Below are positions 32,970 through 63,256 of a stretch of DNA of 64,000 nucleotides, piece after piece. Both the position numbers and the translations under genes were made by a program. Each line of letters begins with the position of its first letter. The first letter of the stretch is position 1. The notes below the pieces were generated by a model. It was given only the letters and a program-made list of their open reading frames with translations, made no database searches and was not told the origin of the DNA. The stretch is taken from positions 1-64,000 of the IMG/VR virus record IMGVR_UViG_3300035698_013060. The stretch is one strand, 5' to 3'.

Positions 32970-33341
32970 CTATTCTTCTATCTTGTTTTTCAACATCTCC
33001 TGTAACTGTTCCGTCTCCCGAACCTTCGGAGCTAACTTCATCGCCACTTTAGCAGCGTTAGCATCGAAGTCGCCCGATAGGAGAGTAGTCAAGTTTATCA
33101 ATATAAGTTTCTCCAGCATAGCTGCGAGACGACCATTAGTCTTGATCGCCGTTCGTAGCTTCTTGAGAGCATTGCAGTGGTCCTTCTCAACAAGATCCCA
33201 CTGATCATCGACTTGAATGCATCCGAGTTTGGTCCGAGTGCATACATCCAAGTCTCGTGTGAGTTCTCTGACGATCTGCTCTTTGTTTCTGAGCATCGAC
33301 ATGAAGAGATTGTATGCTTGTTCGCTGCTCATCTTTGGCAT
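32970..33341 (-). CDS. Hypothetical protein
   Basis: Coupled ORF. Confidence 0.7.
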   Translation of the reverse strand: MPKMSSEQAYNLFMSMLRNKEQIVRELTRDLDVCTRTKLGCIQVDDQWDLVEKDHCNALKKLRTAIKTNGRLAAMLEKLILINLTTLLSGDFDANAAKVAMKLAPKVRETEQLQEMLKNKIEE

Positions 33342-34333
33342 CAGTGTTTAACCTTTTGGATTTTACACATATGGATTCCGTGGTCACAATCCTCACACTC
33401 AAAGGATTTCCGGCTAGCGATGCAGTCATGACAGACTTTGATCTCACACTTAGTGCAGACTAGTTCAGCAGACTTCATTTCCTTGCATTTTTCGCAACGA
33501 AAATGAGTCTTCTCAGGAACTTTCAGACCACGATGCTTGACTGCTGATGGCCATTCATCTGGGAAGTACCAGATATCATTACTTGGTACATCGCACGAGT
33601 AAATGGGGATTGCACCTCCAGCCTCTTTGACGAACCTGTCTGTTTCCGGGTCGTCGTAGCATCCGCAGACGTAGACTTTCACGATTCCCGCAGCTGCCAA
33701 GGCTTTGTAACAAGGGATACATGGAGTGTACGTCATATACGCGATCGCACCATCAGTACTCACACCCCTCTTAGCGGCCTGTCCGATAGCGTTGATCTCG
33801 GCATGTATGGTTCGAACACACCCTTTAGTACCGTCTTCCTCGTTCATAACGAGATGACCGACCTCGTTACAGTGTGGTGTTCCAGGCATGGAACCGTTAT
33901 ACCCTGTCGCCAGTACGAAGTTGTTCTTCACTAAGACACATCCTACGTGAATCTTATCGCACGTAGACCTCTCACTAGCGAGCATTGCCTGTTTGAGGAA
34001 GTACTGTCCCCATGAGGGACGGTCTACATGCTTTTCAGCTGCGAGAGCATCGACTTCTGGACCCATTTTTTGAGCCACACCCAGAATCTCAGCCACAGCA
34101 GTATCTATATTCGAGACACTGACACTCCCTCCGAAGCAGTCGATTCTTGATTCGTCACAAATCCTGGCCTTGACCCATGTATTCTCCGAGTGCATGGGGT
34201 TGATCAATTCCATCATCTTTTCCCCGTGGATATTCCTGACCTCAGGATACCACGAAAGTACCCCAATCGCCACCTCCTTGATGGTTTTAAGGTCCAACCC
34301 GCTTGTGATCTCCAGTCCGTAAAGTTTCGCCAT
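33341..34333 (-). CDS. dCMP deaminase with N-terminal extension and C-terminal Cys-rich domain
   Basis: RPSW..YF, RSTC, VGCVLV, TGYNG, IHAEINAI, TPCIPC; tail with four CxxC. Confidence 0.92.
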   Translation of the reverse strand: MAKLYGLEITSGLDLKTIKEVAIGVLSWYPEVRNIHGEKMMELINPMHSENTWVKARICDESRIDCFGGSVSVSNIDTAVAEILGVAQKMGPEVDALAAEKHVDRPSWGQYFLKQAMLASERSTCDKIHVGCVLVKNNFVLATGYNGSMPGTPHCNEVGHLVMNEEDGTKGCVRTIHAEINAIGQAAKRGVSTDGAIAYMTYTPCIPCYKALAAAGIVKVYVCGCYDDPETDRFVKEAGGAIPIYSCDVPSNDIWYFPDEWPSAVKHRGLKVPEKTHFRCEKCKEMKSAELVCTKCEIKVCHDCIASRKSFECEDCDHGIHMCKIQKVKH

Positions 34334-43322: not shown

Positions 43323-45302
43323 ATGAAGACTGGAGCTTTTCTAGACGAATACTCGGCGGAAGCCACTGCCATGCTTGAGACAGCAGCCGGAAGAAAACTC
43401 ACTGAGAGTGAGATTAATACTCTAAGTAAAACAATCCAAGGGGTAGAAGACACACAGATTGAACTCTCTAACACATATACTGAAACAGAGAGGACTTGTT
43501 CCTTACTATCGGTCCTAGACCGACTTCGAGAAGTGAAACCAATCATCACCGGCAATGGAACCCTCTTTAATAGGGAAGGGGCTGGAGGACACAACGTCGC
43601 TGGTGGTTTTGTGAAGAGTCTTTTAGATACCAGGAAGGCTTGTAAGAAACGGATGTTCGAGGTTCAAGACAAGGCTAAAGGAAAAAAGGGAAATGACAAG
43701 AAGGTTTTGGACCAGCAGAAAGAAGTGTTGGACATGCGCCAGAAGGTCTTTAAAGTCTTAGTAAATGCTTACTACGGCTCGATAGGAATGCCCGCCTTCA
43801 TATTCTATGATCCGAATTCTGCTCCAGCTGTGACTGGAACTGGTATGAACGTAGTCACTAGTCTAGTACAGTCGTTCGAACAGTTCCTTGATGATAACTG
43901 GGCTTTCGAATGTTGGGGTGACGTCTTCGAGTTCGTACAAGCCTCTCTCGACAAAGATTCCTCTTATGAGATCGAATTGTCAACTGACATTAATGTCTCT
44001 GATATCCATGAGAGACTGACGAGAAAGCTTCCAGAAGGATTACATCCTTCAGAGGGTGAAGAGATCTTGTCTCAGATGTCTGCAAGACTTCAGACCCTTC
44101 TTGAATCCTTGGATGATGATCAACTCGCAAGGTTGTATTACAGGAACAATCTTTATGCGTTTCTGGTAGAGAGTGACGTCTCTGATCTCCTTGTAGAAAT
44201 TCTGGGATATGATATCCCATCCGGTAATCCTGGAGAAGTTGATGATCCAACGCTCAAGAAAAATTTAGATACTCTGTGGGCGGTGGTGAATGATTACGTA
44301 GTTCTACTAACGTTCCATCAGGACAGGATGGACTTCTGTGAGCACTCTGAGAAAAGGTCTGTCCTTGTAGTGGACACTGATTCGACATTCCTGTTGATGG
44401 ACACGTTCGTCAAGTGGGTAGTTGACACCTACGATATTGGAGAACTCGATCCTAACAGAAGAATCAGCCTATGTAACATAGTGGTTTTCATGATGGCTGG
44501 ATACTCTGATATTATCCTAGAGGACTATGCTCGTAGGACCAATATCGAAGCATCAGAACATCTGGATTTGAAGAATGAATTCATCTTCTCCAGAATCATG
44601 CTAACTCCTAACAAAAAGTCATATGCTGGAAGCATCATGTCTCGAGAAGGTAAACTACTTAGTCCTCCAAAATTCGAGATCACCGGTCTAAAGATCAAGA
44701 CAATTAATGTGAACAAGAAAACGAGGGAGTACTTCAAGCGCGTATTGAAGGATAAGATAGTTGAGTGTAAAGAGATCGATATCCAAGATCTCTTAGGGGA
44801 ATTTGTAGCTTATGAGGTTATGGTCGCTGAAAGCATCGAGAACGGCGAGCTAGTGTTCGCTCAACCGACGAAATACAGCGGCTTCAGCTTTTATAAGGAA
44901 CCATACAGACAGGCAGTTGTACGGGGAACAGTCGTGTGGAACGATATTTACCCAGAGACTCCAATCCAAGCACTTGACAACGTCAGAATGCTTAAGTGTG
45001 CTGGAATCTCCGAAGGGGATTTCGACGCTATTGTTACTAACTTGAAAAAAGAGGATGCAAAGATAGCCGCCAGGGTCCGTGACCTGGTATTTGAGAATGA
45101 AAAGACTGCTCACCACGGATTCAGCAGAGTTTGTTTACCAAGGTCTGTCAAGGAAATCCCATCCTGGGTCAAGCCGTTTGTGGACGTTGAAATGATCGTC
45201 CATGACAACGTGAGGAACGCGCTCATCCTCCTGGAATCTGTCGGCATTGTAGTGCTCGACGCCAGGAATCGTTCGCGGTACTCCAACATCGTCCGGTTTT
45301 GA
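43323..45302 (+). CDS. Split family-B DNA polymerase, C-terminal part (motifs B and C, thumb)
   Basis: LLDTRKACKK, QKVFKVLVNAYYG, VTGTG, VVDTDS, LKNEF, KKSYA, ITGL. Confidence 0.92.
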   Translation: MKTGAFLDEYSAEATAMLETAAGRKLTESEINTLSKTIQGVEDTQIELSNTYTETERTCSLLSVLDRLREVKPIITGNGTLFNREGAGGHNVAGGFVKSLLDTRKACKKRMFEVQDKAKGKKGNDKKVLDQQKEVLDMRQKVFKVLVNAYYGSIGMPAFIFYDPNSAPAVTGTGMNVVTSLVQSFEQFLDDNWAFECWGDVFEFVQASLDKDSSYEIELSTDINVSDIHERLTRKLPEGLHPSEGEEILSQMSARLQTLLESLDDDQLARLYYRNNLYAFLVESDVSDLLVEILGYDIPSGNPGEVDDPTLKKNLDTLWAVVNDYVVLLTFHQDRMDFCEHSEKRSVLVVDTDSTFLLMDTFVKWVVDTYDIGELDPNRRISLCNIVVFMMAGYSDIILEDYARRTNIEASEHLDLKNEFIFSRIMLTPNKKSYAGSIMSREGKLLSPPKFEITGLKIKTINVNKKTREYFKRVLKDKIVECKEIDIQDLLGEFVAYEVMVAESIENGELVFAQPTKYSGFSFYKEPYRQAVVRGTVVWNDIYPETPIQALDNVRMLKCAGISEGDFDAIVTNLKKEDAKIAARVRDLVFENEKTAHHGFSRVCLPRSVKEIPSWVKPFVDVEMIVHDNVRNALILLESVGIVVLDARNRSRYSNIVRF

Positions 45303-45329
45303 GCCGGAAGAACAAGAAAAACGAGGAGA

Positions 45330-46130
45330 ATGAAGATGGCGAGAAGAAGAGGAAGCGGAATGTTCACGAGATCGGCGCAGGTCTATAACTCCCAGGTTGG
45401 AGCCTTGGAGTTGGGATTTGCTGATTTCGTCGGGTACGTGAAAGTCACAAACGTCAATGAGGACTCGAAGGGCAAGAAAGCTCGGCGTGGTGCTCAGATG
45501 TACGATTATGACCACAGCGTGATGCTGACACTGAATCAAGAAGAACTGGCGATGCTCTCAGCGTCCGTTGAGGACCTGATTGCTGGTGGTCTCGACATGA
45601 TTGAGTTCAGCCACAAGAGCGGGAACAGTATCAAGTCCGTCAGTTTCGGCATCGGTCTGGATGGTGAATCCAAAGAGTTCCAAGTCTGTATGACCGAACT
45701 CGAAAGAGATGATCCTGATCCGGAGAATCCGATTGAGCAATCGTGGTATGAAGTTCCTGTCGAAACCCTCGGATCTGAGGGGAATGAACGGGAATATCGT
45801 CCGGCACTCGAAATCTTCAGATCCTGGATCAGGAGTGCTTTGGCTGTCAGCCTAATGGGCGTGGCCCATTCAACTAACTGCTCGCTTCCGGAGCGTGGAA
45901 GAAGTGGCAGGGGTCCCGGAGGTGGTGACCGCGAAGATGATCGTAGTGGTGGTGACCGTGGAGGAAACCGCGAAGATGATCGTGGTGGTGGTGACCGTGG
46001 AGGAAGTCGCACGGCCGACAGGTCTTCCAGGCCCCGCAGACCAGCACCGAGGCGAGATGAAGGTGATGGTGGAAATGACAATCGCGGTAACGACAACGAT
46101 GGACGTGGTAAAGACGACATTCCGTTCTAG
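45330..46130 (+). CDS. Putative single-stranded DNA-binding protein
   Basis: After the polymerase; G/R/D-rich disordered linker and C-terminal DDIPF. Confidence 0.7.
   Translation: MKMARRRGSGMFTRSAQVYNSQVGALELGFADFVGYVKVTNVNEDSKGKKARRGAQMYDYDHSVMLTLNQEELAMLSASVEDLIAGGLDMIEFSHKSGNSIKSVSFGIGLDGESKEFQVCMTELERDDPDPENPIEQSWYEVPVETLGSEGNEREYRPALEIFRSWIRSALAVSLMGVAHSTNCSLPERGRSGRGPGGGDREDDRSGGDRGGNREDDRGGGDRGGSRTADRSSRPRRPAPRRDEGDGGNDNRGNDNDGRGKDDIPF
45928..46005 (+). repeat. 39-bp tandem duplication in the SSB-like linker
   Basis: ACCGCGAAGATGATCGT[A/G]GTGGTGGTGACCGTGGAGGAA x2. Confidence 0.9.
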
Positions 46131-46152
46131 GACGGGATTGATCTAATGAATT

Positions 46153-46187
46153 AAGAGGACTGGACGGGAAGCCGTCCGGTCCTCTTT
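46153..46187 (+). terminator. Terminator after SSB-like gene
   Basis: AAGAGGACTGGACGG-GAAG-CCGTCCGGTCCTCTT. Confidence 0.7.
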
Positions 46188-46203
46188 CACTGGAGGAATA
46201 AAG

Positions 46204-46950
46204 ATGAAAAGATCTGAGCAGGCGCACCTAAGTGTAGGTTCGCCTACAATGCTCGAGTTCGAGAAAGACCCGAAGGTCCTGGAGAAGAAAGTAACAGAAT
46301 TCCTTCCTGGGATCGTGAAAGAGAGTCCCATAAAGCTCATGGTATGTGACTTGGACGAAGTCCTAGTCCGCATCTGTCCGAAATGGCTTGTAGAGGCTTT
46401 CAAAGTCGGGATGGTTGATGAAGAATTAGTCAACCCTCTGGCAGTAGATGCCAGAACGAAGTACAACATTAGCGAGTACATGGGGGTATCTCAAGAAGAG
46501 GCCCTCAGGGTCTATGACACCTTGGACTTCTACGATGACCTCGTTCCTACTAAGTTGGGAGCAGCTCTCTCGTTTGCCTCTTCTAAAGAGGTGATAAAAC
46601 TGGCCATTGTCTCACACAATACTCCGAGGAACCTGGAGAGTAAGAGGAGATTCTGTAAGAAATTCTGGCCCAGAGCTAGTAGGTTCTTTCTTCCGTTGGA
46701 CCAGCCTAAGTCCGATATCATCAATGAGAAAGGCCTTGGAGGATACTGCACATTCTGTGACGATAGCGTAGCCGTAATGTGTGACGTGGTAGCCAACACC
46801 GATCCAATAGGAAAAGAATTCCTTATGCCCCTATACGGATACAACGGGGAGGATTCCTTTCCAGACGTTCTCATCCAGGCTATGGCTGAATCAGGGGCGA
46901 CCCTTAGGTACTACTCTCCAAGTTCAGAGGGGCCATCCCCGGTAATCTAG
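46204..46950 (+). CDS. HAD-superfamily 5'(3')-deoxyribonucleotidase-like protein
   Basis: CDLDEVLV motif I, DFYDDL, IVS motif II, K, FCDDS motif IV, YGYN. Confidence 0.75.
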   Translation: MKRSEQAHLSVGSPTMLEFEKDPKVLEKKVTEFLPGIVKESPIKLMVCDLDEVLVRICPKWLVEAFKVGMVDEELVNPLAVDARTKYNISEYMGVSQEEALRVYDTLDFYDDLVPTKLGAALSFASSKEVIKLAIVSHNTPRNLESKRRFCKKFWPRASRFFLPLDQPKSDIINEKGLGGYCTFCDDSVAVMCDVVANTDPIGKEFLMPLYGYNGEDSFPDVLIQAMAESGATLRYYSPSSEGPSPVI

Positions 46951-47012
46951 GTCCGAACAGGATATTGACTACACCTCACTCAAATTCCAAGAGCCGGAGA
47001 GAGTCGAGACGC

Positions 47013-48563
47013 ATGAAGACGGACATATTCCAAATAGACACGTTCGTGGAGGTCAACAGCCTGAAGGCCGTTACCAACCCGATCTACCTCAATCCCGACA
47101 GGACACCCACGTCCAACGGGATCTTTTCGTTTGAGATCTTCGGTACTCCGGGGACTAGGGATAGGAAAGAAAGGTTCGGGTATATCGACCTCAATGCACA
47201 CGTCATACACCCGTTCCTGTACAAACATCTCGTTCAGATGGACCGGAAAATCCGGGCCGTGGCCGAAGGGATGAACTTGTTCAAGGTTGATAAGGCTGGA
47301 GATCTTGCCAAAGCAGAAGAAGGTGATAAGGATGCTGGTACAGGATTGGAGTGGCTATACTCTGTCTTTAAGACCATCAAGTGGAAGCCTTCCGGGACTA
47401 AGTCTCGTGATACGAAGATCTCAATGTTTCGCCAACTGAAGGTGGATGAGATCTTCGTGACCAAGTGGCCGATAATTCCATGTCACTACAGAGATCTGAA
47501 CTTTGCCAAATTAGATACCGGACGTATCGGTATTGGTGAAGTGAATGAGTTCTATGTTAGGGTCCTTGGAGCATCTGAAGCAGTCAAGAGGAACCCTCCT
47601 GGTCTTGGTTTGGTTGGTCACTCAGCGTCGTACAGGATGCAGACTGTCTTAGTTGAGCTCTATGATCATCTGATGTCCCGTATGACCTTTGGTAAGCGGG
47701 GCTACATTCGTCGGTTCCTTATGGGTAAGAACCTAGACTATACGGCTCGGGTAGTCATCACAACCAGTAAGATGTCCGAGGCTGATAGGTACACTGATAC
47801 TGAAGTGCCTCTTTCTCACATGGGCGTTCCTTTGCACATCTGCTGTGTTGCCTTTCAACCATTCGTGGTAAAGGCAGTACAGGAGATGCTTGGGTCCATC
47901 CTAGCTGGAAAGAGGCGTATCATCATGGGGCAGAAGTCTGTCGAGGGTATAGATCTTCTCTCCGAGAATATCTCGGATGATGGAGTCGAACAGATGATCT
48001 CCATGTTCGCCAGATCCCAGGAAGAGCGGTTCAGTCCGATCCTCTTGGAAGATGCTGAAGGGAACAAGACGGAACTCAAGTTGTTTGAACAGTTTCTGGG
48101 CCGTAGCTTTACGGTGTGCGATCTTCTTTTTCTTGCCTGCCGAGAGGCTATCAAAGGCAAGTACATGTACATCACTCGTTATCCAGTAACGTCACATCAG
48201 TCAACCAACGTTGTCAAACCAGTCATTGTCACTACCGAGAAAACTACTACGATCGACTTCACCCCAGGTGGAACTGCCGAAGGACGTAGATCTATTCTTG
48301 GAAAGATTGACAATTACCCGGATATCAATTACGGTCACCTGTGGCGTGAAGCTGCAGTGATGGACAATACTATGACTGGAATCACTGGCGCAGACTTCGA
48401 CGGAGATCAAATGAGTCTCGTCGGGATGTTCACCCAGGAAGCCAACGCTGAAGCTGAAAAGATCATGAAGAGTAAGATGAGTCTCGTGACGGCTGACGGA
48501 CGTCCGTCCAGAAACGTTAGTAATGAGGCTGTGCTTTCGTTGTACATGATGACAAAGGATTGA
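47013..48563 (+). CDS. RNA polymerase beta-prime N-terminal/catalytic fragment
   Basis: GIFSFEIFG, RFGYIDL, IIPCHYRD, GKRGYIRRFLMGKNLDYTARVVI, TRYP, catalytic GADFDGD; start moved to MKTDIF. Confidence 0.95.
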   Translation: MKTDIFQIDTFVEVNSLKAVTNPIYLNPDRTPTSNGIFSFEIFGTPGTRDRKERFGYIDLNAHVIHPFLYKHLVQMDRKIRAVAEGMNLFKVDKAGDLAKAEEGDKDAGTGLEWLYSVFKTIKWKPSGTKSRDTKISMFRQLKVDEIFVTKWPIIPCHYRDLNFAKLDTGRIGIGEVNEFYVRVLGASEAVKRNPPGLGLVGHSASYRMQTVLVELYDHLMSRMTFGKRGYIRRFLMGKNLDYTARVVITTSKMSEADRYTDTEVPLSHMGVPLHICCVAFQPFVVKAVQEMLGSILAGKRRIIMGQKSVEGIDLLSENISDDGVEQMISMFARSQEERFSPILLEDAEGNKTELKLFEQFLGRSFTVCDLLFLACREAIKGKYMYITRYPVTSHQSTNVVKPVIVTTEKTTTIDFTPGGTAEGRRSILGKIDNYPDINYGHLWREAAVMDNTMTGITGADFDGDQMSLVGMFTQEANAEAEKIMKSKMSLVTADGRPSRNVSNEAVLSLYMMTKD

Positions 48564-55598: not shown

Positions 55599-58424
55599 GT
55601 GTACATATCTTATTTAAGACTCGTTAACTTTACAGGAGTCTTCTCGGGGACCGGTCGTAGTGACATCGAGATTGAATTTCCGGACCCAAAGTCAATGTCG
55701 TCTAGGGTAATCTTGTTCATGGGAGCCAATGGCTCAGGCAAGTCAACTACTATGTCTCACCTACATCCCTTTGCTGGGAGCTTCGATGGTCGTGAAGACA
55801 CTATGGTTAGGACCAATGAAGACGGTCTTAAACAGATCCAACTGATCGACGGTGATACTGTATACGACATTGAACACCATTATATACGTTCCGGTAAGAA
55901 GCCGAAGACTAAGAGCTTCATCCAGATTTCTCAGGTTGGTGACGAGAAATCGACTGAACTGAACGAGAATGGTGGAGTTGGTACCTTCAAGGATGTTTTA
56001 GTCGAACGCCTCGGATTGACGGAAGAATTTTTCAAGGTCGGTAGACTGGCTTCAACGACCTCCAACTTCGTGGAGTTGTCCGCAGCACAGAGGAAAGACT
56101 TCATTACGTCTCATCTTCCCAGAGTAGAGCCGTACTTGGAAGCTTTCGGGCATGTTAGGAAGAAGTGCTCGACTAGTGAAAAAACTATGAAGTATCTCGC
56201 CTCAGAGATCTCACGGTACGACGACAGAGAGCAAGTTAACACTGAGATGAACGACGCTAAAAGAGAACTGAAGCGTCGGGATAAAGCTCTGCGAATTCGA
56301 CAAGGTGACGTCTCTGTAACTCAGAGTAAGATTGATACTCTGGTTGAAAAGATCGGTGATGGTACGGAAACCAAAGCCGAGCTCGAGACTGAGCTTCAAG
56401 AATCTTTAGAGTCTTTGGAGGAAGAGCTGGAAACTGTTGTGGAAACGACTGGCGTAGATTACGAAGATGTAGAGACGGTTCAAACTTCGTCGAAAACAAC
56501 CGTAGCTAGGTTGGAACAGGACTTTGATACACAGGATTCACGAATGAGTGAACTGCGTAACGAATTGATCAAGATCGAGAAAGGTTTGGCTGTCAAGGAG
56601 CGCAGGCTTGCTTCTGTCGGAGAACGAGGAGTTGATATCAAGAAACTCCAGAAGGTAGCCAAGGACGAAAAGGTTGAGAAAAAGGCCTCTACTAAGAAGG
56701 CTCAATCTCTTCTGAAAAACTCGACTATCAAAAGGTTTCTTTCACTCGCTGACCATATTCCTGAGTCTCGTTACAGGGGCGAAGCTAGGATGGGTTTAAT
56801 TGAAGCCTCCAGACTCGTCGCTGAGATCTTTCAGTTCCATTCTTCTGTCGAAGCTGACGAAGATGACAACTTCTTTGAGAGTATCACTGAAGAGATCATT
56901 GATCCCAGTTGTAGAGAAGCTACGCTTACTGCAAAGCATGCAGCTGAAGGACTCAGAAAAGACTACATCAAGGCTAAAGAAGACTTGGAGGAACTGGAAC
57001 GTGCAGCCAAGGCTGCTGATGAACTCAATCTCAGACCAGAGGATTGCTCCATTGACTCATGTCATTTCCTCCAGGATGCTGTAGAAGGAAGTAAGAAAGC
57101 CAAGATGATTCCAAAGGCCAAGAGGAAACTGAAGGATATCAAAGAGAAAGGTTTGGAGCAGAAAGAAGCAGCTGAATACTATTCTGCTGTAATGAACGCA
57201 GCCGGGTATGTAAGACAGTTAGCAGAGTTATTAGCTCAAGGCGAAGCCTTTGAAGGTGTTATCCTTCAGAGTAAGAACAAGAAGAACAATCTTGTACCGT
57301 TCTCTCGAGCCATTTTCTCAGGGATGGATCCGTTTGATGTTCCTTCTGTCGCTTCGTACGTCGGTGAAACCGGTGAACTTCATTTCAGAAGTGCTGCTGA
57401 GTCATGTCAGGTTATCTTTGACTATCTGGAATACTTGGAAGACATCCAGAGACATAACGTGAATGCAACAGCTGCTGAAGAGAAGATTGCAACTGTTGAA
57501 GGAAGCGTGGAGTTGGTAACCGGATTGAAGACTGAGATAACCGAATCCAAGAATGATGTTACTAAAAGGAAGACTGCTATCTCTAAGAAGCTCAAAAAGC
57601 TAGTTGAGACTGAAAGACGTCGCAACGAAGCTAGAGAAGTCTGTAGAGGAGCTGATAGAGTAGCTATTCTTGTGAAGAAGTACTCTAAGGCTAAAGAAGA
57701 GCTGACTGAGGTATCGAAGTCTCTTGGTAAGGTTCGGAAGCAGATAAAGCAACTCTCTGATTTCAGAGAGAAGTTAACAGAACAAACTGAGAGTATGGAG
57801 ACTGATGAAAAGTCCAGGGATGCTGCCGCTGAGAAAACTAGACTCTTAGAGGTCAAGATCTCCAAACTGGACGAGTACCAAACTCGATACGATGAGTTCC
57901 AGGCCAGCTACGTTAAACAGGTTGCAGTCAGAGATGCCTGTGATCCTAAGAAGGGTCTCCCACTTGCATTCATGAGAGAATTCATGGCCTCTACTGAAGT
58001 GACAGCAAATACACTCTTCGACATGGCTTTTCGAGGCCGTTTCAGGGTCGGATTTGAAGTCAGTGAAAAGGAGTTCAAGGTCCCTGTTCTAAAGGATGAC
58101 GGTGACATTCTACCGGACGTCAGTTATGCCAGCGACGGAGAGCGAGCTTTGGTCAAGACCATCGTTTCACTTGCTTTACTCAGTCGATACGTCAATGTAT
58201 TCCCGATTCTCGCTATGGATGAGGTAGATGCTACCTTAGACGAAGAGCACAGAGGGAATTTCGCACAGATATTAGACAACCAGGTTGAGGAGCTTGACCT
58301 ATCACAGGTCTTCGCCATCAGCCACAACGAAAACTTCCGTGATCCTAGCGTTTCTGTTGTCCTATTTCCAGGACATACGCTCGGTGAGGGAGAGACAAAT
58401 CCGGTGTTGATGGACTTCTCATAA
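55599..58424 (+). CDS. SbcC/Rad50-like SMC ATPase
   Basis: Walker A GANGSGKST, long coiled coils, CSIDSC hook-like motif, ASDGE signature, Walker B AMDEVD, ISHNE. Confidence 0.93.
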   Translation: MYISYLRLVNFTGVFSGTGRSDIEIEFPDPKSMSSRVILFMGANGSGKSTTMSHLHPFAGSFDGREDTMVRTNEDGLKQIQLIDGDTVYDIEHHYIRSGKKPKTKSFIQISQVGDEKSTELNENGGVGTFKDVLVERLGLTEEFFKVGRLASTTSNFVELSAAQRKDFITSHLPRVEPYLEAFGHVRKKCSTSEKTMKYLASEISRYDDREQVNTEMNDAKRELKRRDKALRIRQGDVSVTQSKIDTLVEKIGDGTETKAELETELQESLESLEEELETVVETTGVDYEDVETVQTSSKTTVARLEQDFDTQDSRMSELRNELIKIEKGLAVKERRLASVGERGVDIKKLQKVAKDEKVEKKASTKKAQSLLKNSTIKRFLSLADHIPESRYRGEARMGLIEASRLVAEIFQFHSSVEADEDDNFFESITEEIIDPSCREATLTAKHAAEGLRKDYIKAKEDLEELERAAKAADELNLRPEDCSIDSCHFLQDAVEGSKKAKMIPKAKRKLKDIKEKGLEQKEAAEYYSAVMNAAGYVRQLAELLAQGEAFEGVILQSKNKKNNLVPFSRAIFSGMDPFDVPSVASYVGETGELHFRSAAESCQVIFDYLEYLEDIQRHNVNATAAEEKIATVEGSVELVTGLKTEITESKNDVTKRKTAISKKLKKLVETERRRNEAREVCRGADRVAILVKKYSKAKEELTEVSKSLGKVRKQIKQLSDFREKLTEQTESMETDEKSRDAAAEKTRLLEVKISKLDEYQTRYDEFQASYVKQVAVRDACDPKKGLPLAFMREFMASTEVTANTLFDMAFRGRFRVGFEVSEKEFKVPVLKDDGDILPDVSYASDGERALVKTIVSLALLSRYVNVFPILAMDEVDATLDEEHRGNFAQILDNQVEELDLSQVFAISHNENFRDPSVSVVLFPGHTLGEGETNPVLMDFS

Positions 58425-58785: not shown

Positions 58786-58962
58786 ACCCGGGTGTTGGGG
58801 GGTCAGGTCCGATTCCTTAGTATAATCCGCGAGCATCCCGGGTCCAAGGTCTAACAATCCTTGTCTCCTTATGTAAACGGCACCCCTTGCACTGGCGTGG
58901 AGCCATGTAATGGGAGGGCGACCGGAGCCCTTGCAGGACCACCGGTAAATTTTCAGGAGAGA

Positions 58963-59271
58963 ATGATGACAATCACAGACCATTTAAAGGCATACGTCGA
59001 GCAGGCCGGTTTAGTTCCTGGAACTATGGACTATTACCTGGCAGAAAATGCCTTTTGGTTTGCAGCAGCTAGTGTCTTTAATGAAATCCTTAGCGTAACC
59101 AATAAGCCAAAGCTCATCAGCAGTTACGTGCTCAGGGAGCAGCTAGAGGCAATGAGGGGAGAAATTGAGGGAGGAGCTAAGAAAGCTGTCATTGATGCCT
59201 TTCTATCTAGATTCAAAACTCAAGGAGAGGAAAACGATGAAATTGAACAACGACCAGATGGCAACCCTTAG
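58963..59271 (+). CDS. Hypothetical protein
   Basis: AGGAG RBS, start moved to MMTITD. Confidence 0.7.
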   Translation: MMTITDHLKAYVEQAGLVPGTMDYYLAENAFWFAAASVFNEILSVTNKPKLISSYVLREQLEAMRGEIEGGAKKAVIDAFLSRFKTQGEENDEIEQRPDGNP

Positions 59272-59605
59272 AGTAGCCTTTCAACACGGTCCTGAGAGAT
59301 GCATGGTACGCTTGAGAGCTTCTGACAAGAAGTGTACTCTCATGGTCCGCAAAGGACAAGCAAAGGCCGTCCCACTGAGAGAGCTTGGAGGCATGGCAGC
59401 TAGGGCTGTTCTCAACATGTGCACCGAGATTCGGAAAGACCGGATGGCTGTGTACTACAAGTTCAAGCAAGAGGCTCTCAACGCCTACCAGGAGGAAATG
59501 GATCGTGTGCGAAAAACCAAACAAGGTGAAGGTGGGAGTACTGGGACCGGGACACAACCAGGACAGACAAGCTCAGATGATGATAGAGGGGCTGAAACAA
59601 AGTAG
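59237..59605 (+). CDS. Hypothetical protein
   Basis: GGAGAGG RBS, start MKLNND. Confidence 0.7.
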   Translation: MKLNNDQMATLRVAFQHGPERCMVRLRASDKKCTLMVRKGQAKAVPLRELGGMAARAVLNMCTEIRKDRMAVYYKFKQEALNAYQEEMDRVRKTKQGEGGSTGTGTQPGQTSSDDDRGAETK

Positions 59606-59918
59606 TTTGAATGAGATAATTCCGGTGAAGACAGAGATGGAGCTGGAACAAGAGGAAGCGAAGAAAAACTGGCCTGGTCCTGAGGAAGAGAAACCTCAAG
59701 TAGTCTTCCCTTTCAAAAAGACCCCAGACGCGTCAGCGGCTATGCTATTGGCAATGGCCTCCTCAATGGGCGGAGCTATGTATGGAGGATCAGGGAGAGG
59801 AGCCAAAGGAGTCGGCTTTGGATCCAAGCAAACGAAGAGTCGTTCCAAGAGCCAAAAGACCAAGCGCAACACGGCTAAGGCTAGTAAGCGAAGTAACAGG
59901 AGAAAGAAGAAGAAATGA
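59577..59918 (+). CDS. Hypothetical protein with basic tail
   Basis: KRNTAKASKRSNRRKKKK C-terminus; start uncertain. Confidence 0.6.
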   Translation: MMIEGLKQSSLNEIIPVKTEMELEQEEAKKNWPGPEEEKPQVVFPFKKTPDASAAMLLAMASSMGGAMYGGSGRGAKGVGFGSKQTKSRSKSQKTKRNTAKASKRSNRRKKKK

Positions 59919-60919
59919 TTAATTTCATCCAGAAGGCATCTTATGACAGAGCTCTGAAACTGGCTTCAGCCAATTTCACCTCCGATACGAAGATTCCTGA
60001 CTGGACAACGGAGAAGGGCTGGGAGGCTGAGATCGGAATGGATTTAGCCTCCCTAGCTCTGCATCCTGGTCTGGTTTGGGACCATAATAGAGAGAAGGCT
60101 ATTCATTTTTCCAAGAGGGTGGTGTTTGCTACGAACATCAACAAGACCAATGGAGTGGCTCATATCATTCTTCCGGCGTTCGTCAGCGATCCTTTCACAG
60201 ATGATCGTCGAATTGACTACGATGAAATCGAGAACGCAGTGTGGTATGCCCACAGGGCCATGGAAAGAATCTATACCACCAAAAAAGATGATTCCTGGGT
60301 TAGACGGAAAGTCGGTATCACCGGTCTGGCTGATATGCTTCTCATGCTGAACATCAGGTATGATAGCATGGAGGGACTGGAAGTCTGCCGAGAAGTCTGT
60401 TACCATGTGGCAAGAGCTTCATGGATGGCGTCTATCGTTCATCATGGAGAGAATCTTTCATTCGATACGCATAGCTACATAAGGTCAGATAAGCTCGATA
60501 GGTTCTTGAACCAAGCCGGTCGTAGACTCGACAACGTTATCATGAAGCAGATGAGAACGTCATCCAAATTCAGATATTTTGACGGAACAACGGCTGACAG
60601 TCCTCCTGCTAACGCATGCGAGATTGCCAATTTTGTATCTTCCGGAGTGGGAGTTCTACAACCGACGAGGGCATGGTGGAAAGATAGTAACGACAGATCT
60701 GACACCGAGTTCGGTTACTCCTTTATGGAGTTCGTCAGATGGTTCTATGAGATCGAGTCAGGTGTTAGCATCTCTCGTGACAATCCTCCGGAATTCCTTG
60801 ATAGATGTTGGGCTATCGATCACAACGTCTACAATACTTGTTGTAAAGGGATCTCTGAACCGAATGTATGCATGAAGTATACATGGGTCTATGAGATCAT
60901 TGCCCTGGACCTGCTCTGA
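59915..60919 (+). CDS. Degenerate ribonucleotide reductase large-subunit-like protein (catalytic loop missing)
   Basis: HPGLVWD, FVSDPFT...IDYDEI, RRKVGITGLADML..LNIRYDS.EG, PPANACEIANFVSSGVG align with NrdJ/NrdA; NPCGE absent. Confidence 0.75.
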   Translation: MINFIQKASYDRALKLASANFTSDTKIPDWTTEKGWEAEIGMDLASLALHPGLVWDHNREKAIHFSKRVVFATNINKTNGVAHIILPAFVSDPFTDDRRIDYDEIENAVWYAHRAMERIYTTKKDDSWVRRKVGITGLADMLLMLNIRYDSMEGLEVCREVCYHVARASWMASIVHHGENLSFDTHSYIRSDKLDRFLNQAGRRLDNVIMKQMRTSSKFRYFDGTTADSPPANACEIANFVSSGVGVLQPTRAWWKDSNDRSDTEFGYSFMEFVRWFYEIESGVSISRDNPPEFLDRCWAIDHNVYNTCCKGISEPNVCMKYTWVYEIIALDLL

Positions 60920-60976
60920 AACTCATATTAGGTCCAGGACGCTGGAACAACAAACCCTGAAATAGGAGATAGGTGC

Positions 60977-62821
60977 ATGGATATAACGCGCATGGAGATA
61001 GAACAGCTGCTGGAAGGCGGCAGAGACTTCCGTGATAGCACTAAGTGGATGGTCATGGGATCTCACTTCGATGACTATAGAAATGAGTCCCTTAGGATCG
61101 GCTTCCCGAATGGGGACGAGATTGAGACCACTCGCAAAGAGTTGATGGTCAACCTCATCGTACTTCCTATCTTCCCGAAGTTCGGAGTGGAGTTGGAGCC
61201 AGAGCTCTGGTTCGACTCGGAGGTCTATGGGTCCGACATGGCTGAGTACTTCGATATGGCCATCACAGCCCTTGGAGAGGTCGAGGACGTCGGGGCAGTC
61301 AACAGAGCGGTAGCTGAAGCCATCGCTGAGCTCTCATCGTTAGCGGTGGACGCTAACGTGAGAATAGGAAGCACCGTAAACCTCTGGGAGCTCGGACGTG
61401 TCTGTGACGAGGTTCCTAGGCTTGATGAGATTCTACACACGGACATGAGTGCTGTTGGGGATTTCCGTAAGGTTGAACTCCGCATCAACGAGCTCATGAG
61501 AGAAGCAGAAGATCTCCTCTCGGAGCACTCTCAGATCTATAAGGCGCTTCTACGGAATACCAATTCGGATCAGTTCAAACAGATTCTTGTCAGCATCGGT
61601 CCCAAGCCGAACTTGTTTGGAGAGGTCATTCCGGAGCTTCCGGACACCAACTTCATGCGAGGTCTGAGGAACGTTCAAGACTTCTTTCTGATGTCAGAGA
61701 CGGCCAGGAAGGTCCTGATCACGACTCACAGATCGGTCAGACAATCGGGCTATCTCACCAGGAAGCTCTCGTTACTAACCATCGACACACTACTCAGTGA
61801 AGAAGATGACTGTGGCACTCAGCACTGCGTGAAATTTGAGATCACTGACGAAGATGCTCTTTCTCGTATCAAGGGAAGATGGTATAAGGAGACCACCACA
61901 TCAGATGAGCTGGTTATGGTGGATCCTGACAACGAGTCGTTGATCGGAAAGACCATATTTCTGCGATCCCCGATGACGTGTGCAGGGACAGATGTCTGTC
62001 GGACTTGCTATGGTGATCTTTGGAGAGTTAACAAGGACATGCATGTCGGCATCGTTGCCGTACTGTTCTTGACCAGTCAGTTCACCCAGAGGCTTCTATC
62101 GGCAAAGCATCTACTTCAGACCCGTTCTCCTGACTTGGATTGGGGTGAGAAGTTCTTGATGGCATTTTCTGTTGATAGATCCATCGTCACAGTCCTCCCG
62201 GACTTCAATGCCACGTTGGTTTTAGATGACGATGACGTCGAAGACGACGAGAGTACTGGAGAGAAGTACATCACCGGCATGACCTTGACTACCTCGTCGA
62301 GGGAACTCAGGATTCCACTCCCAGCCCAACTGTATTTCACTGATGACTTTCAGAAAGCCCTACCAGGTTTCAGGACATCAGAGGGAAAGTTCGAAATCAA
62401 ACTCAAGGACTTCGTTGATGAGGTCATCTTCTCAGTGTTCATCCAGAACGAGGAGATCACTCAGTCTCTCAATCAGATCAAGGCGTTGATCGAAAACAAG
62501 GATCATCTTGGGGCCGAAACGATTGATGAGATGGTAAGCATGATGTTCGGTCTGCTCAGTGGCAACGGTATCTTGTTGGACATGATTCACATCGAGTGCA
62601 TCATGCGGAACTTGATACGGGATCCGGAAGACATCTCCGAAAGGCCGGACTTCCATACGGAATCACCGGACTACGTCATCTTAAGGCTGGCTGACTCCAT
62701 CCTTCACGGGAAGAGTGTCACCGTCGGTCTTTCGTTCGAAAATCTCAAACAGCAGCTTAACTCAGCCAGGACGTTCCGTAAGGAAGGTTCCTCATTGATA
62801 GACTGCTTCTTCGAAAGGTAG
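60977..62821 (+). CDS. RNA polymerase beta-prime C-terminal half (bridge helix, trigger loop)
   Basis: NFMRGL, SGYLTRKL, EDDCGT, LRSPMTC, VCRTCYG, TQRLLSAKH, HIECIMR, LSFE; early promoter at 60924-60931. Confidence 0.95.
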   Translation: MDITRMEIEQLLEGGRDFRDSTKWMVMGSHFDDYRNESLRIGFPNGDEIETTRKELMVNLIVLPIFPKFGVELEPELWFDSEVYGSDMAEYFDMAITALGEVEDVGAVNRAVAEAIAELSSLAVDANVRIGSTVNLWELGRVCDEVPRLDEILHTDMSAVGDFRKVELRINELMREAEDLLSEHSQIYKALLRNTNSDQFKQILVSIGPKPNLFGEVIPELPDTNFMRGLRNVQDFFLMSETARKVLITTHRSVRQSGYLTRKLSLLTIDTLLSEEDDCGTQHCVKFEITDEDALSRIKGRWYKETTTSDELVMVDPDNESLIGKTIFLRSPMTCAGTDVCRTCYGDLWRVNKDMHVGIVAVLFLTSQFTQRLLSAKHLLQTRSPDLDWGEKFLMAFSVDRSIVTVLPDFNATLVLDDDDVEDDESTGEKYITGMTLTTSSRELRIPLPAQLYFTDDFQKALPGFRTSEGKFEIKLKDFVDEVIFSVFIQNEEITQSLNQIKALIENKDHLGAETIDEMVSMMFGLLSGNGILLDMIHIECIMRNLIRDPEDISERPDFHTESPDYVILRLADSILHGKSVTVGLSFENLKQQLNSARTFRKEGSSLIDCFFER

Positions 62822-62827
62822 GGAAAC

Positions 62828-63256
62828 ATGGCGACGGAAGCGAAAAGAGAGTGGATGTCCGAAGCTCTGAAATACATGTGGGACAAACTGCTGGGAGTCG
62901 TCAGCGGGAATCTTCTCGAAGATGACGTTCTTGCCGTTATGCTTAAGATAGAGGAAACGATCCTCTATAACGGGTACTCTGTTAAGTACGGAAGGGCTAG
63001 AGACAAGGCTCCACACCAGATCATCAAGATCTATGAGACCCCAAAGGGATCCAAACAGTTTGCAGTGTTTACGATGCTGTTGGGTGGCGAATCCTCCAAA
63101 AAGATCATCGACGACAACAACCAGGAACGCCTTATGCTAGGTGAGATCTGGGATGATAGTCGAGGTAAGAAACGGAAGATTGGTCCTGGTAAAAAGGGTC
63201 ATCGGAGAGAGGAGAATGATAAGAATGCAAGTAATGATAAACCTCCTTCAGTCTGA
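62828..63256 (+). CDS. Hypothetical protein
   Basis: 142-aa ORF directly after RNAP gene. Confidence 0.7.
   Translation: MATEAKREWMSEALKYMWDKLLGVVSGNLLEDDVLAVMLKIEETILYNGYSVKYGRARDKAPHQIIKIYETPKGSKQFAVFTMLLGGESSKKIIDDNNQERLMLGEIWDDSRGKKRKIGPGKKGHRREENDKNASNDKPPSV

What the first reader, a model, noticed from the sequence alone, without database searches (positions are those of the whole stretch)
59915..60919. Ribonucleotide reductase pseudo-enzyme with the radical cysteine loop excised
Seen: the 334-aa intact ORF aligns by eye with the C-terminal half of NrdJ/NrdA. Where those read ATNPCGEQPL...CxLGSINL..FV.DPF, this reads ATNINKTNGVAHIILPAFVSDPF: both catalytic cysteines and the Glu are gone, and the APT motif is degraded. 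It remains open, overlaps the upstream stop codon, and sits just before an RNAP subunit. Inference: a repurposed fold, e.g. dominant-negative inhibitor or decoy of host RNR, nucleotide sensor, or anti-defence bait.
Basis: partly seen in the sequence, partly recalled or inferred. Interest (0 to 1): 0.6.

Follow-up and report, generated by a model that had tools for sequence, protein, structure and literature searches.

The report
Dead ribonucleotide reductase relic in jumbo phage
A giant salt-lake phage keeps, under selection, the back half of a vitamin-B12-type ribonucleotide reductase from which the catalytic loop and the whole front half are gone, so it is a conserved non-enzyme of unknown job, not a working enzyme and not a rotting pseudogene.

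Summary
ORF 59915-60919 (+, 334 aa) is a true homologue of the C-terminal half of class II ribonucleotide reductase (NrdJ): Pfam PF02867 above its cut-off, profile-profile probability 99.2%, and Z 16.4 to Thermotoga NrdJ. It lacks the finger loop with the radical Cys and Glu, the second redox Cys, the APT phosphate loop, the C-terminal tail and the whole N-terminal half.

The complete 241-kb phage genome has no other RNR piece, so this is not a split enzyme. It is also not neutral debris. Two more lineages carry the same truncated, loop-less ~320-aa ORF in the same place, just upstream of the non-virion RNA polymerase beta'-C gene. They are 26-39% identical to it, while synonymous sites are saturated.

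In sister phages that slot holds an intact class II RNR, or an NrdJ interrupted inside the catalytic Cys codon by a LAGLIDADG-bearing insert. This points to mobile-element damage as the origin of the deletion.

The function is unknown. A non-catalytic binding or scaffold role is inferred. The gene is absent in one close relative and evolves about twice as fast as its neighbours. The closest analogy is the inactive or moonlighting R1 homologues of herpesviruses. Interest is moderate.

The parts
59915..60919 (+). RNR-derived non-catalytic ORF (334 aa, P0001); corresponds to the second half of the NrdJ barrel domain
59915..59918 (+). ATGA start/stop overlap with the upstream ORF (translational coupling likely); an AGGAG lies 12 nt upstream of the ATG
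   Evidence: read from the sequence
60128..60157 (+). Scar of the finger loop: residues 72-74 (A-T-N) are kept, and residues 75-81 replace the stretch that in NrdJ carries N-P-C-G-E and the second redox Cys
60155..60439 (+). Best-conserved RNR core (residues 81-175; strands betaF and betaG with their helices), the only part that profile methods align to NrdJ with significance
   Evidence: AF2 pLDDT 75-93 here
60617..60634 (+). Family-specific motif C-E-I-x-N-F, sitting where NrdJ has the phosphate-binding A-P-T-G...N-N-V-S-S-G region (degraded)
60716..60748 (+). Family-specific aromatic motif (Y..[LM]EFV[RT][WY]FY), invariant in all three members and absent from NrdJ
59577..59918 (+). Upstream small ORF (113 aa counted from its double Met) ending in a poly-basic tail. 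A like-featured 130-aa gene lies directly upstream of beta'-C in relative L109.
59237..59605 (+). Conserved small ORF (122 aa), 36% identical over 92 aa to the gene upstream of the RNR-like gene in L009
60977..62821 (+). Non-virion RNA polymerase beta' C-terminal subunit (36.6% identical to the AR9/PBS1 subunit); conserved downstream neighbour of the RNR-like gene in all three lineages
55599..58424 (+). SbcC-like ATPase (941 aa), the conserved upstream landmark of the slot

Best explanation
SHOWN
- The ORF encodes the second half (about betaE to the last barrel helix) of a class II RNR (NrdJ-type) alpha subunit.
- It lacks the N-terminal half-barrel, the finger loop with the thiyl-radical Cys, Asn and Glu, both redox cysteines, the phosphate loop and the C-terminal redox tail. 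It therefore cannot reduce ribonucleotides.
- No complementing fragment and no other RNR exist in the complete genome.
- The same truncated, loop-less architecture is kept as an intact ~320-334-aa ORF in three lineages whose neutral sites are saturated. New family-specific invariant motifs lie in the C-terminal third. The gene is therefore under purifying selection for a non-catalytic function.

INFERRED
- It descends from an RNR gene that occupied this slot upstream of the nvRNAP beta'-C gene. Sister phages carry there an intact RTPR-type RNR, or an NrdJ interrupted in the catalytic Cys codon by a LAGLIDADG-bearing intron-like insert.
- The left edge of the deletion in this ORF lies within 1-2 codons of that homing site. 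Imprecise loss or repair at a mobile-element site is thus a likely way the loop was excised.
- The protein most likely works by binding rather than catalysis. It could be an adaptor or scaffold kept from the ancestral enzyme's contacts in the early replication and nucleotide-supply module, or a binder of a host factor.
- It is accessory, not essential. It evolves about twice as fast as its neighbours and is absent in one close relative.
For: Homology and fold.

Missing residues.

No other RNR and no N-half in the 241-kb DTR genome, which CheckV rates 100% complete. In one search, hmmsearch --max with an NrdJ N-half profile on all six frames gave a best E of 3.1.

Family of three with conserved synteny.
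- RNR-like identity is 36-39% where the neighbours are 65-67% identical.
- RNR-like identity is 26-29% where the neighbour is 44-46% identical.

Third-base identity at four-fold sites is 12-36%, which is saturated. GC3 of the homologue tracks its genome at 96%.

beta'-C tree: the three carriers fall in one 98/98 clade, sister to the phages with real RNRs in the slot.

Slot content in relatives and mapping of the insert to Pfam profile positions 211/226.
Against: - No expression data. All holders are DNA runs.
- No microdiversity for a proper dN/dS. Every copy found is 100% identical.
- Only three family members exist among 1.8 billion representatives.
- One relative in the same clade (L109) has no such gene.
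- Orthology with the slot RNRs of sister phages is positional only. The relic's core is more like alphaproteobacterial and roseophage NrdJ (36-38% identity) than the AT-rich L105 NrdJ (26%).
- The last 100 residues are poorly modelled, with pLDDT 30-48.
- No partner has been identified.
- Rfam does not recognise the L105 insert as a group I intron.
Confidence: 0.7

Rival explanations
1. Neutral relic: a fragment of a dead nrdJ gene that happens to remain open and has no function.
For: - Catalytic parts are gone.
- It evolves faster than its neighbours.
- It is absent from relative L109.
- The slot is visibly battered by mobile elements in relatives.
Against: - The same start, end and deletion are kept in three lineages with saturated synonymous sites and GC contents from 46 to 67%.
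- Protein similarity is E 1e-66 and 2e-51 against 1.8 billion proteins.
- There are invariant family-specific motifs.
- The chance of 334 open codons is about 2e-8.
Confidence: 0.06
2. Piece of a still-active, fragmented RNR (genes-in-pieces as in Aeromonas phage Aeh1 NrdA-a/NrdA-b, or trans-splicing) whose other part is elsewhere.
For: RNR genes of phages are often split by homing endonucleases (PMC3045599). A relative (L105) has an interrupted NrdJ in this very slot.
Against: - No N-terminal half anywhere in the complete genome.
- The region on both sides of the loop is contiguous in one ORF, and the Cys, Glu and second Cys are simply missing.
- No invariant Cys in the family.
- No Rfam intron nearby.
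Confidence: 0.02
3. Accessory factor of the phage non-virion RNA polymerase, co-expressed with its beta'-C subunit.
For: It lies immediately upstream of the beta'-C gene, and is co-oriented with it, in all three lineages.
Against: - The adjacency is inherited from a slot that holds ordinary RNR genes in sister phages.
- AR9, BpSp and phiR1-37 have unrelated genes there.
- L109 has the polymerase gene without it.
- The known AR9 and phiKZ nvRNAPs have no RNR-like subunit (PMC9209446 and PMC7598289 by title and abstract; otherwise my own knowledge).
Confidence: 0.08
4. Inhibitor or decoy aimed at the host: either a dominant-negative partner or decoy of host RNR, or a binder of a host defence protein, as herpesvirus R1 proteins bind RIPK1/3 or APOBEC3B.
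For: - Faster evolution than neighbouring core genes fits host-interaction genes.
- Viral RNR large subunits are known to be repurposed this way (PMC5469499, PMC12282084; 7rw6 BORF2-APOBEC3B appears among the structural matches).
- New conserved aromatic motifs could form an interface.
Against: - No host is known and no partner was tested.
- The canonical RNR dimer interface lies in the missing N-terminal half.
- The PADLOC scan gives nothing meaningful.
- The rate difference is unspecific.
Confidence: 0.14

Closest known systems
Class II (adenosylcobalamin) ribonucleotide reductase NrdJ, dimeric type (e.g. T. maritima NrdJ; NrdJ of Rhodobacter and roseobacter phages)
   Same: Homologous sequence and fold for the second half of the 10-stranded barrel: betaF/betaG core 36% identical to an NrdJ profile, Z 16.4.
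   Different: It has no N-terminal half, finger loop, radical Cys, redox cysteines, phosphate loop, TSCPD domain or C-terminal tail. It scores 41 bits against the 400-bit cut-off of TIGR02504. It cannot be an enzyme.
Betaherpesvirus inactive R1 homologues (HCMV UL45, MCMV M45) and moonlighting herpesvirus R1s (EBV BORF2, KSHV ORF61)
   Same: A viral RNR large-subunit homologue kept without catalytic function and without a partner subunit, used (in herpesviruses) as a binding protein against host defence (PMC5469499, PMC12282084). These proteins appear among the structural matches.
   Different: Those are full-length class I R1 folds with added N-terminal motifs, from animal viruses. This is half of a class II fold in a bacteriophage, and no function has been shown.
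Fragmented RNR genes of phages (Aeh1 nrdA-a/mobE/nrdA-b; intron- or intein-interrupted nrd genes)
   Same: Mobile-element damage at the most conserved RNR codons. Relative L105 has a LAGLIDADG-bearing insert inside the catalytic Cys codon of the NrdJ in this same slot (PMC3045599).
   Different: In those cases both parts persist and activity is restored. Here the loop and the N-half are lost for good.
NCBIfam NF005401 'ribonucleotide reductase-like protein' (PRK06948, 604 positions)
   Same: Weak local similarity in the betaG region (20-37 bits).
   Different: That is a full-length family with a cut-off of 906 bits. This protein is not a member.

Membership tests
Class II RNR (NrdJ), active enzyme | Thiyl-radical Cys with Asn and Glu on the finger loop that joins the two half-barrels (PMC9531940) | tested here: not met
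   The loop is replaced by 7 unrelated residues. Cys and Glu are absent in all three members, and Asn is kept in P0001 only.
Class II RNR (NrdJ), active enzyme | N-terminal half-barrel (betaA-betaE) with the first redox Cys, the specificity site and the dimer helices | tested here: not met
   The ORF starts about 70 residues before the loop. There is no N-half in any frame of the genome.
Class II RNR (NrdJ), active enzyme | Second redox Cys after the loop, the A-P-T-G phosphate loop, and the C-terminal redox tail or TSCPD domain | tested here: not met
   Alignment A1. The protein ends before the G-C-K-G strand.
Class II RNR (NrdJ), active enzyme | Score above curated family cut-offs | tested here: inconclusive
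   Pfam PF02867 domain cut-off: passed by P0001 (31.2 bits) and P0003 (34.2 bits), not by P0002. NCBIfam TIGR02504 equivalog: 41-50 bits against a cut-off of 400, failed.
RNR/PFL 10-stranded barrel fold | Structural match to RNR large subunits | tested here: met
   For the second half only: Foldseek E 2e-6, VIA Z 16.4 with 268 residues aligned, ESM Atlas model TM 0.7. The model is confident for residues 55-225 only.
Fragmented but active RNR (Aeh1 type) | Both fragments present, with the catalytic residues retained between them | tested here: not met
Viral inactive R1 homologues (UL45/M45 kind) | RNR homologue lacking catalytic residues, no partner subunit in the genome, maintained by selection | tested here: met
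   This is an analogy of kind, not common descent: class II origin, half-length.
Viral inactive R1 homologues (UL45/M45 kind) | Demonstrated binding of a host defence or signalling protein | not testable with these tools
   The host is unknown. Only a homodimer job was run, and it gave no verdict.

The most novel reading that the evidence does not exclude
The relic is a true phage pseudo-enzyme, the first half-barrel RNR derivative. It was created when a mobile intron or homing endonuclease site in the catalytic Cys codon was repaired imprecisely. It has since been kept as a binding module that captures a host or phage protein of nucleotide supply or defence, in the way herpesvirus R1 proteins capture RIPK1/3 or APOBEC3B.
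Probability: 0.2. Interest if true: 0.7.

Novelty: new variant of a known kind. Interest (0 to 1): 0.45.

Why it matters
Dead-enzyme homologues of RNR are known from herpesviruses, where they became immune-evasion proteins. I found none described for bacteriophages (paper search; otherwise my own knowledge).

Three states of one phage gene slot are visible side by side: intact, mobile-element-interrupted at the catalytic codon, and a truncated loop-less form that is still selected. This makes a natural series for how a mobile element can turn an essential enzyme gene into raw material for a new protein.

It also shows that half of the RNR barrel can persist as an independent protein. That bears on ideas that the 10-stranded barrel arose from two half-barrels.

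The practical value is limited. The family is tiny, the host is unknown and the function is open.

Tried and rejected
- **Homodimer test.** I asked whether two half-barrels re-form a barrel, using complex prediction with 2 copies. The score was 0.23 against a mark of 0.42, which is no verdict and counts neither for nor against.
- **Microdiversity for dN/dS.** The IMG/VR twin contig, the two contigs of P0002 and contigs from four salt-lake runs are all 100% identical, so no pN/pS was possible.
- **More family members.** The word search with the single protein and with the family profile, IMG/VR and JGI metagenome scans found only true NrdJ genes beyond the three members.
- **Sequence search of PDB** with the protein and with the family profile gave nothing significant.
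- **phiR1-37 g101.** This 347-aa gene lies in the same position upstream of beta'-C. It is not related.
- **AR9 and BpSp** have short unrelated genes in that position.
- **Rfam** found no intron, either near the ORF or in the L105 insert.
- **PADLOC** gave only a weak Cas3b hit (18 bits) in one member, taken as chance.
- **Promoter and terminator scan** was no better than shuffles.
- **The L105 exons** were searched separately by reference.

Full report
**What is there**

The window is the first 64 kb of a 241,176-bp virus record with direct terminal repeats, rated complete. ORF 59915-60919 (+) is 334 codons long. Its ATG overlaps the stop of the upstream ORF (ATGA), and it ends 57 nt before a 614-aa gene.

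That downstream gene is the C-terminal beta' subunit of a jumbo-phage multisubunit RNA polymerase. It matches PHROG 3015 at E 7e-70. It is 36.6% identical to the non-virion beta'-C subunit of Bacillus phages PBS1/AR9, and the next best matches are BpSp, Yersinia phiR1-37 and the Staphylococcus jumbo phages.

Upstream lie a SbcC-like ATPase (55599-58424) and two or three small ORFs. Further upstream are a family-B DNA polymerase and another polymerase subunit. By composition, the chance of 334 open codons is about 2e-8.

**Is it RNR-like?**

Yes, on every line of evidence:
- Pfam's RNR barrel domain is matched above its gathering score: 31.2 against 23.9 bits, residues 82-175 matching profile positions 230-328 of 523.
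- The best NCBIfam model is the class II equivalog NrdJ_Z (E 9e-11), although far below its cut-off.
- tblastn against 50,697 phage records finds only class II RNRs, at about 25% identity over residues 60-303.
- A three-member family profile aligns to an NrdJ profile with 99.2% probability, but only over columns 79-174.
- An AlphaFold2 model has mean pLDDT 60.8. It is good for residues 55-225 and poor for 1-50 and 233-334.
- With that model Foldseek finds RNR large subunits only (E about 2e-6). VIA-align gives Z 16.4, rmsd 4.2 Å, with 268 residues aligned to T. maritima NrdJ.
- The ESM Atlas model of the same sequence superposes on NrdJ clusters with TM about 0.7.

**What is missing**

The RNR catalytic domain is a 10-stranded barrel made of two five-stranded halves. 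The finger loop joins the halves and carries the thiyl-radical Cys. In class II enzymes the adenosyl pocket lies between that Cys and strand betaJ (PMC9531940).

Alignments with nine and with three sequences show the following:
- The ORF starts about 70 residues before the loop and keeps A-T-N.
- It then has seven unrelated residues where NrdJ has P-C-G-E and, after a spacer, the second redox Cys, up to the start of strand betaF.
- The A-P-T-G-(T/S) phosphate loop is degraded.
- The chain stops after the last barrel helix, before the G-C-K-G strand and any redox tail.
- No Cys is invariant among the three relatives.

It understates the loss, because the whole first half-barrel is absent too.

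**Is another piece or another RNR present?**

No. Six-frame searches of the whole genome were run with the Pfam barrel domain, PHROG 84, NrdB and NrdD. They find only this locus or nothing, while the controls ring. A profile of the N-terminal half of 20 NrdJ sequences, run at maximum sensitivity on all stop-to-stop frames, gives a best E of 3.1. AR9 has an ordinary RNR large subunit elsewhere in its genome, and phiR1-37 has none.

**Is it decaying?**

No. An exhaustive HMMER search of 1.84 billion representatives gives just two relatives that share the architecture:
- P0002: 319 aa, full-length match, E 2e-51.
- P0003: 319 aa, E 3e-10.

Everything else found is a true RNR that matches only the core. 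The word search, IMG/VR and the JGI metagenomes add no further members.

Both relatives lie on short metagenome contigs with the same gene order as in the window:
- The RNR-like gene is followed after 58-73 nt by the beta'-C gene.
- On the P0002 contigs it is preceded by the SbcC-like gene and by a homologue of the small ORF at 59237-59605.

| Comparison with the window | RNR-like protein | Neighbouring proteins |
|---|---|---|
| P0002 lineage | 36-39% identical | 65-67% identical |
| P0003 lineage | 26-29% identical | 44-46% identical |

At four-fold degenerate codons of identical residues, third-base identity is 12-36%, which is no better than composition predicts. The three genomes have 48, 67 and 46% GC. 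GC3 of the P0002 gene is 96%, like its neighbour. Neutral DNA would long since have lost all similarity and its reading frame.

Instead, start, end, length and the loop deletion are shared. New invariant motifs have appeared in the C-terminal third: C-E-I-x-N-F, and an aromatic motif ending in E-F-V-x-x-F-Y. The protein evolves roughly twice as fast as its neighbours, so the constraint is real but looser.

A proper dN/dS could not be obtained, because every other copy found is 100% identical. These copies are an IMG/VR twin contig, the two contigs of P0002, and contigs from four further salt-lake runs.

**Where it came from**

Relatives were found through the beta'-C protein, and their contigs show what else occupies the slot:

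| Relative | Content of the slot upstream of beta'-C |
|---|---|
| L103/L104 (beta'-C 47% identical) | Intact 738-aa RTPR-type class II RNR with its N-P-C-x-E loop, between the SbcC-like gene and beta'-C |
| L105 (46% identical) | NrdJ in two pieces around a 251-aa LAGLIDADG endonuclease ORF, followed by a TSCPD-domain ORF and preceded by a TnpB-like gene |
| L107 | No RNR there |
| P0069 contig | No RNR there |
| L109 | A basic-tail small gene, then beta'-C, with no RNR-like gene and no trace of one |

In L105, the first piece matches Pfam profile positions 5-211 and the second matches 226-523. Reading the DNA, the first piece ends ...AAT CCG T and then runs into a stop. The open frame of the second resumes so that GT GGC GAA follows.

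Removing the insert would therefore restore N-P-C-G-E. The upstream exon ends in U and the insert ends in G, as in group I introns. Rfam does not recognise the insert, so "intron" is an inference. I searched the two exons separately by reference and did not join them.

A beta'-C tree places the window with L008 (support 100/99), and these together with L010 and L109 in a clade with 98/98 support. That clade lies next to the L103 and L105 lineages.

The simplest reading is a single origin of the truncated, loop-less gene in this clade, from an RNR resident in the slot. The left edge of the deletion lies within one or two codons of a known homing site, which suggests imprecise repair or imprecise loss of a mobile insert.

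This last step is inferred. Orthology with the L105 or L103 genes is positional only, and the relic's core resembles alphaproteobacterial and roseophage NrdJ more than either.

**How it most likely works**

Catalysis is excluded by what is missing. A split enzyme is excluded by the genome-wide searches.

The canonical RNR dimer and specificity-site helices lie in the absent N-terminal half (established structures of class I and dimeric class II enzymes). This makes a classical dominant-negative heterodimer with host RNR unlikely. Loss of the phosphate loop and of the adenosyl pocket argues against substrate sensing or AdoCbl chemistry. Binding of cobalamin or a nucleotide elsewhere on the protein cannot be excluded.

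What remains is a stable alpha/beta core plus a newly conserved, aromatic-rich C-terminal part. That profile fits a binding protein.

I therefore favour a non-catalytic adaptor or binder, expressed with the early replication and transcription block. Its partner is either a phage nucleotide-supply or replication protein (a contact inherited from the ancestral enzyme) or a host protein. Its absence from L109 and its faster rate mark it as accessory.

Adjacency to the polymerase gene is best explained by inheritance of the slot, not by a polymerase function. A homodimer prediction gave no verdict.

**Comparison with what is known**

By descent it is a derivative of class II NrdJ, but it fails every defining catalytic feature. 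It is not a member of the enzyme family.

By kind it resembles the inactive or moonlighting R1 proteins of herpesviruses: UL45/M45, and BORF2 and ORF61, which bind APOBEC3B (PMC5469499, PMC12282084). Several of these appear among the structural matches. Those proteins, however, are full-length class I folds in animal viruses.

By origin it is related to the fragmented RNR genes of phages (PMC3045599), but it lacks their restored activity.

A search of the paper library for inactive RNR homologues in jumbo phages found nothing pertinent.

**Verdict**

The pseudo-enzyme reading is supported and sharpened.

It is a new variant of a known kind and of moderate interest. The evolutionary series in the slot is its most instructive aspect, and the unknown function and tiny family limit it.

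Noticed in passing
window 33341-34333 (-): A 330-aa ORF with a dCMP/cytidine deaminase domain (PF00383, 83-87 bits; ComEB-like) and an N-terminal extension of about 100 aa. The genome has no ThyA, ThyX or NT5C match. Together with kinship to PBS1/AR9, phiR1-37 and Staphylococcus S6-like phages, which I recall as deoxyuridine-DNA phages, this hints at dU in place of dT in the DNA. It is not shown.
   Followed up: partly
window 59237-59605 and 59577-59918 (+): Two small ORFs that overlap by 29 nt. The first is 36% identical to the N-terminal 92 aa of a single 177-aa ORF in L009. The second ends in a run of Lys/Arg, like the 130-aa gene directly upstream of beta'-C in L109. They could be two genes or one gene read with a frameshift.
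   Followed up: partly
L105 1407-5159: NrdJ of a related AT-rich phage (31% GC), interrupted inside the catalytic Cys codon by an insert of about 1 kb encoding a LAGLIDADG endonuclease. The junctions look like group I splice sites (U before, G at the end), but Rfam finds no intron. A separate TSCPD-domain ORF follows and a TnpB-like ORF precedes.
   Followed up: partly
L103 3197-5413 (also L104): An intact 738-aa RTPR-type (monomeric-type insertion domain) class II RNR in the same slot between the SbcC-like and beta'-C genes. The slot thus holds two different RNR subtypes in sister phages, which suggests repeated replacement.
   Followed up: partly
L107 6467-8582: In another relative, the genes just downstream of beta'-C include an Acb2/Tad1-hairpin-domain protein (anti-CBASS/Thoeris sponge family) and a Volactin/MreB-like actin homologue. 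These annotations are precomputed Pfam hits only.
   Followed up: no
window 60904-60938 (+): A 10-bp inverted repeat whose loop holds the stop codon of the RNR-like gene. No U-run follows, and the folding energy of the 101-nt stretch is not unusual (z -1.4).
   Followed up: partly
window 58800-62900: The phage occurs in salt-lake metagenomes filed under 11 studies. Contigs from four further runs that were laid on it are identical to the window, without one difference.
   Followed up: yes
L008/L009 versus window versus L103/L105: Relatives sharing this gene order span 30 to 67% GC. In the 67% GC relative, third codon positions are 96-98% G+C.
   Followed up: no
model of window 59915-60919: BFVD holds an unnamed 292-aa viral protein (H9NJL2) that aligns with the model over nearly its whole length (TM 0.50 by target, E 3.5e-3). 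It could be another short RNR-like viral protein. The ESM Atlas also lists a 333-aa bacterial 'hypothetical protein' cluster as nearest by features (0.93), which is untested.
   Followed up: no
window 43323-48560 (+): A family-B DNA polymerase (43323-45299) and a second RNA polymerase subunit with an Rpb1 domain 2 match (46965-48560) lie in the same + strand block, so the target sits in a replication and transcription module.
   Followed up: partly
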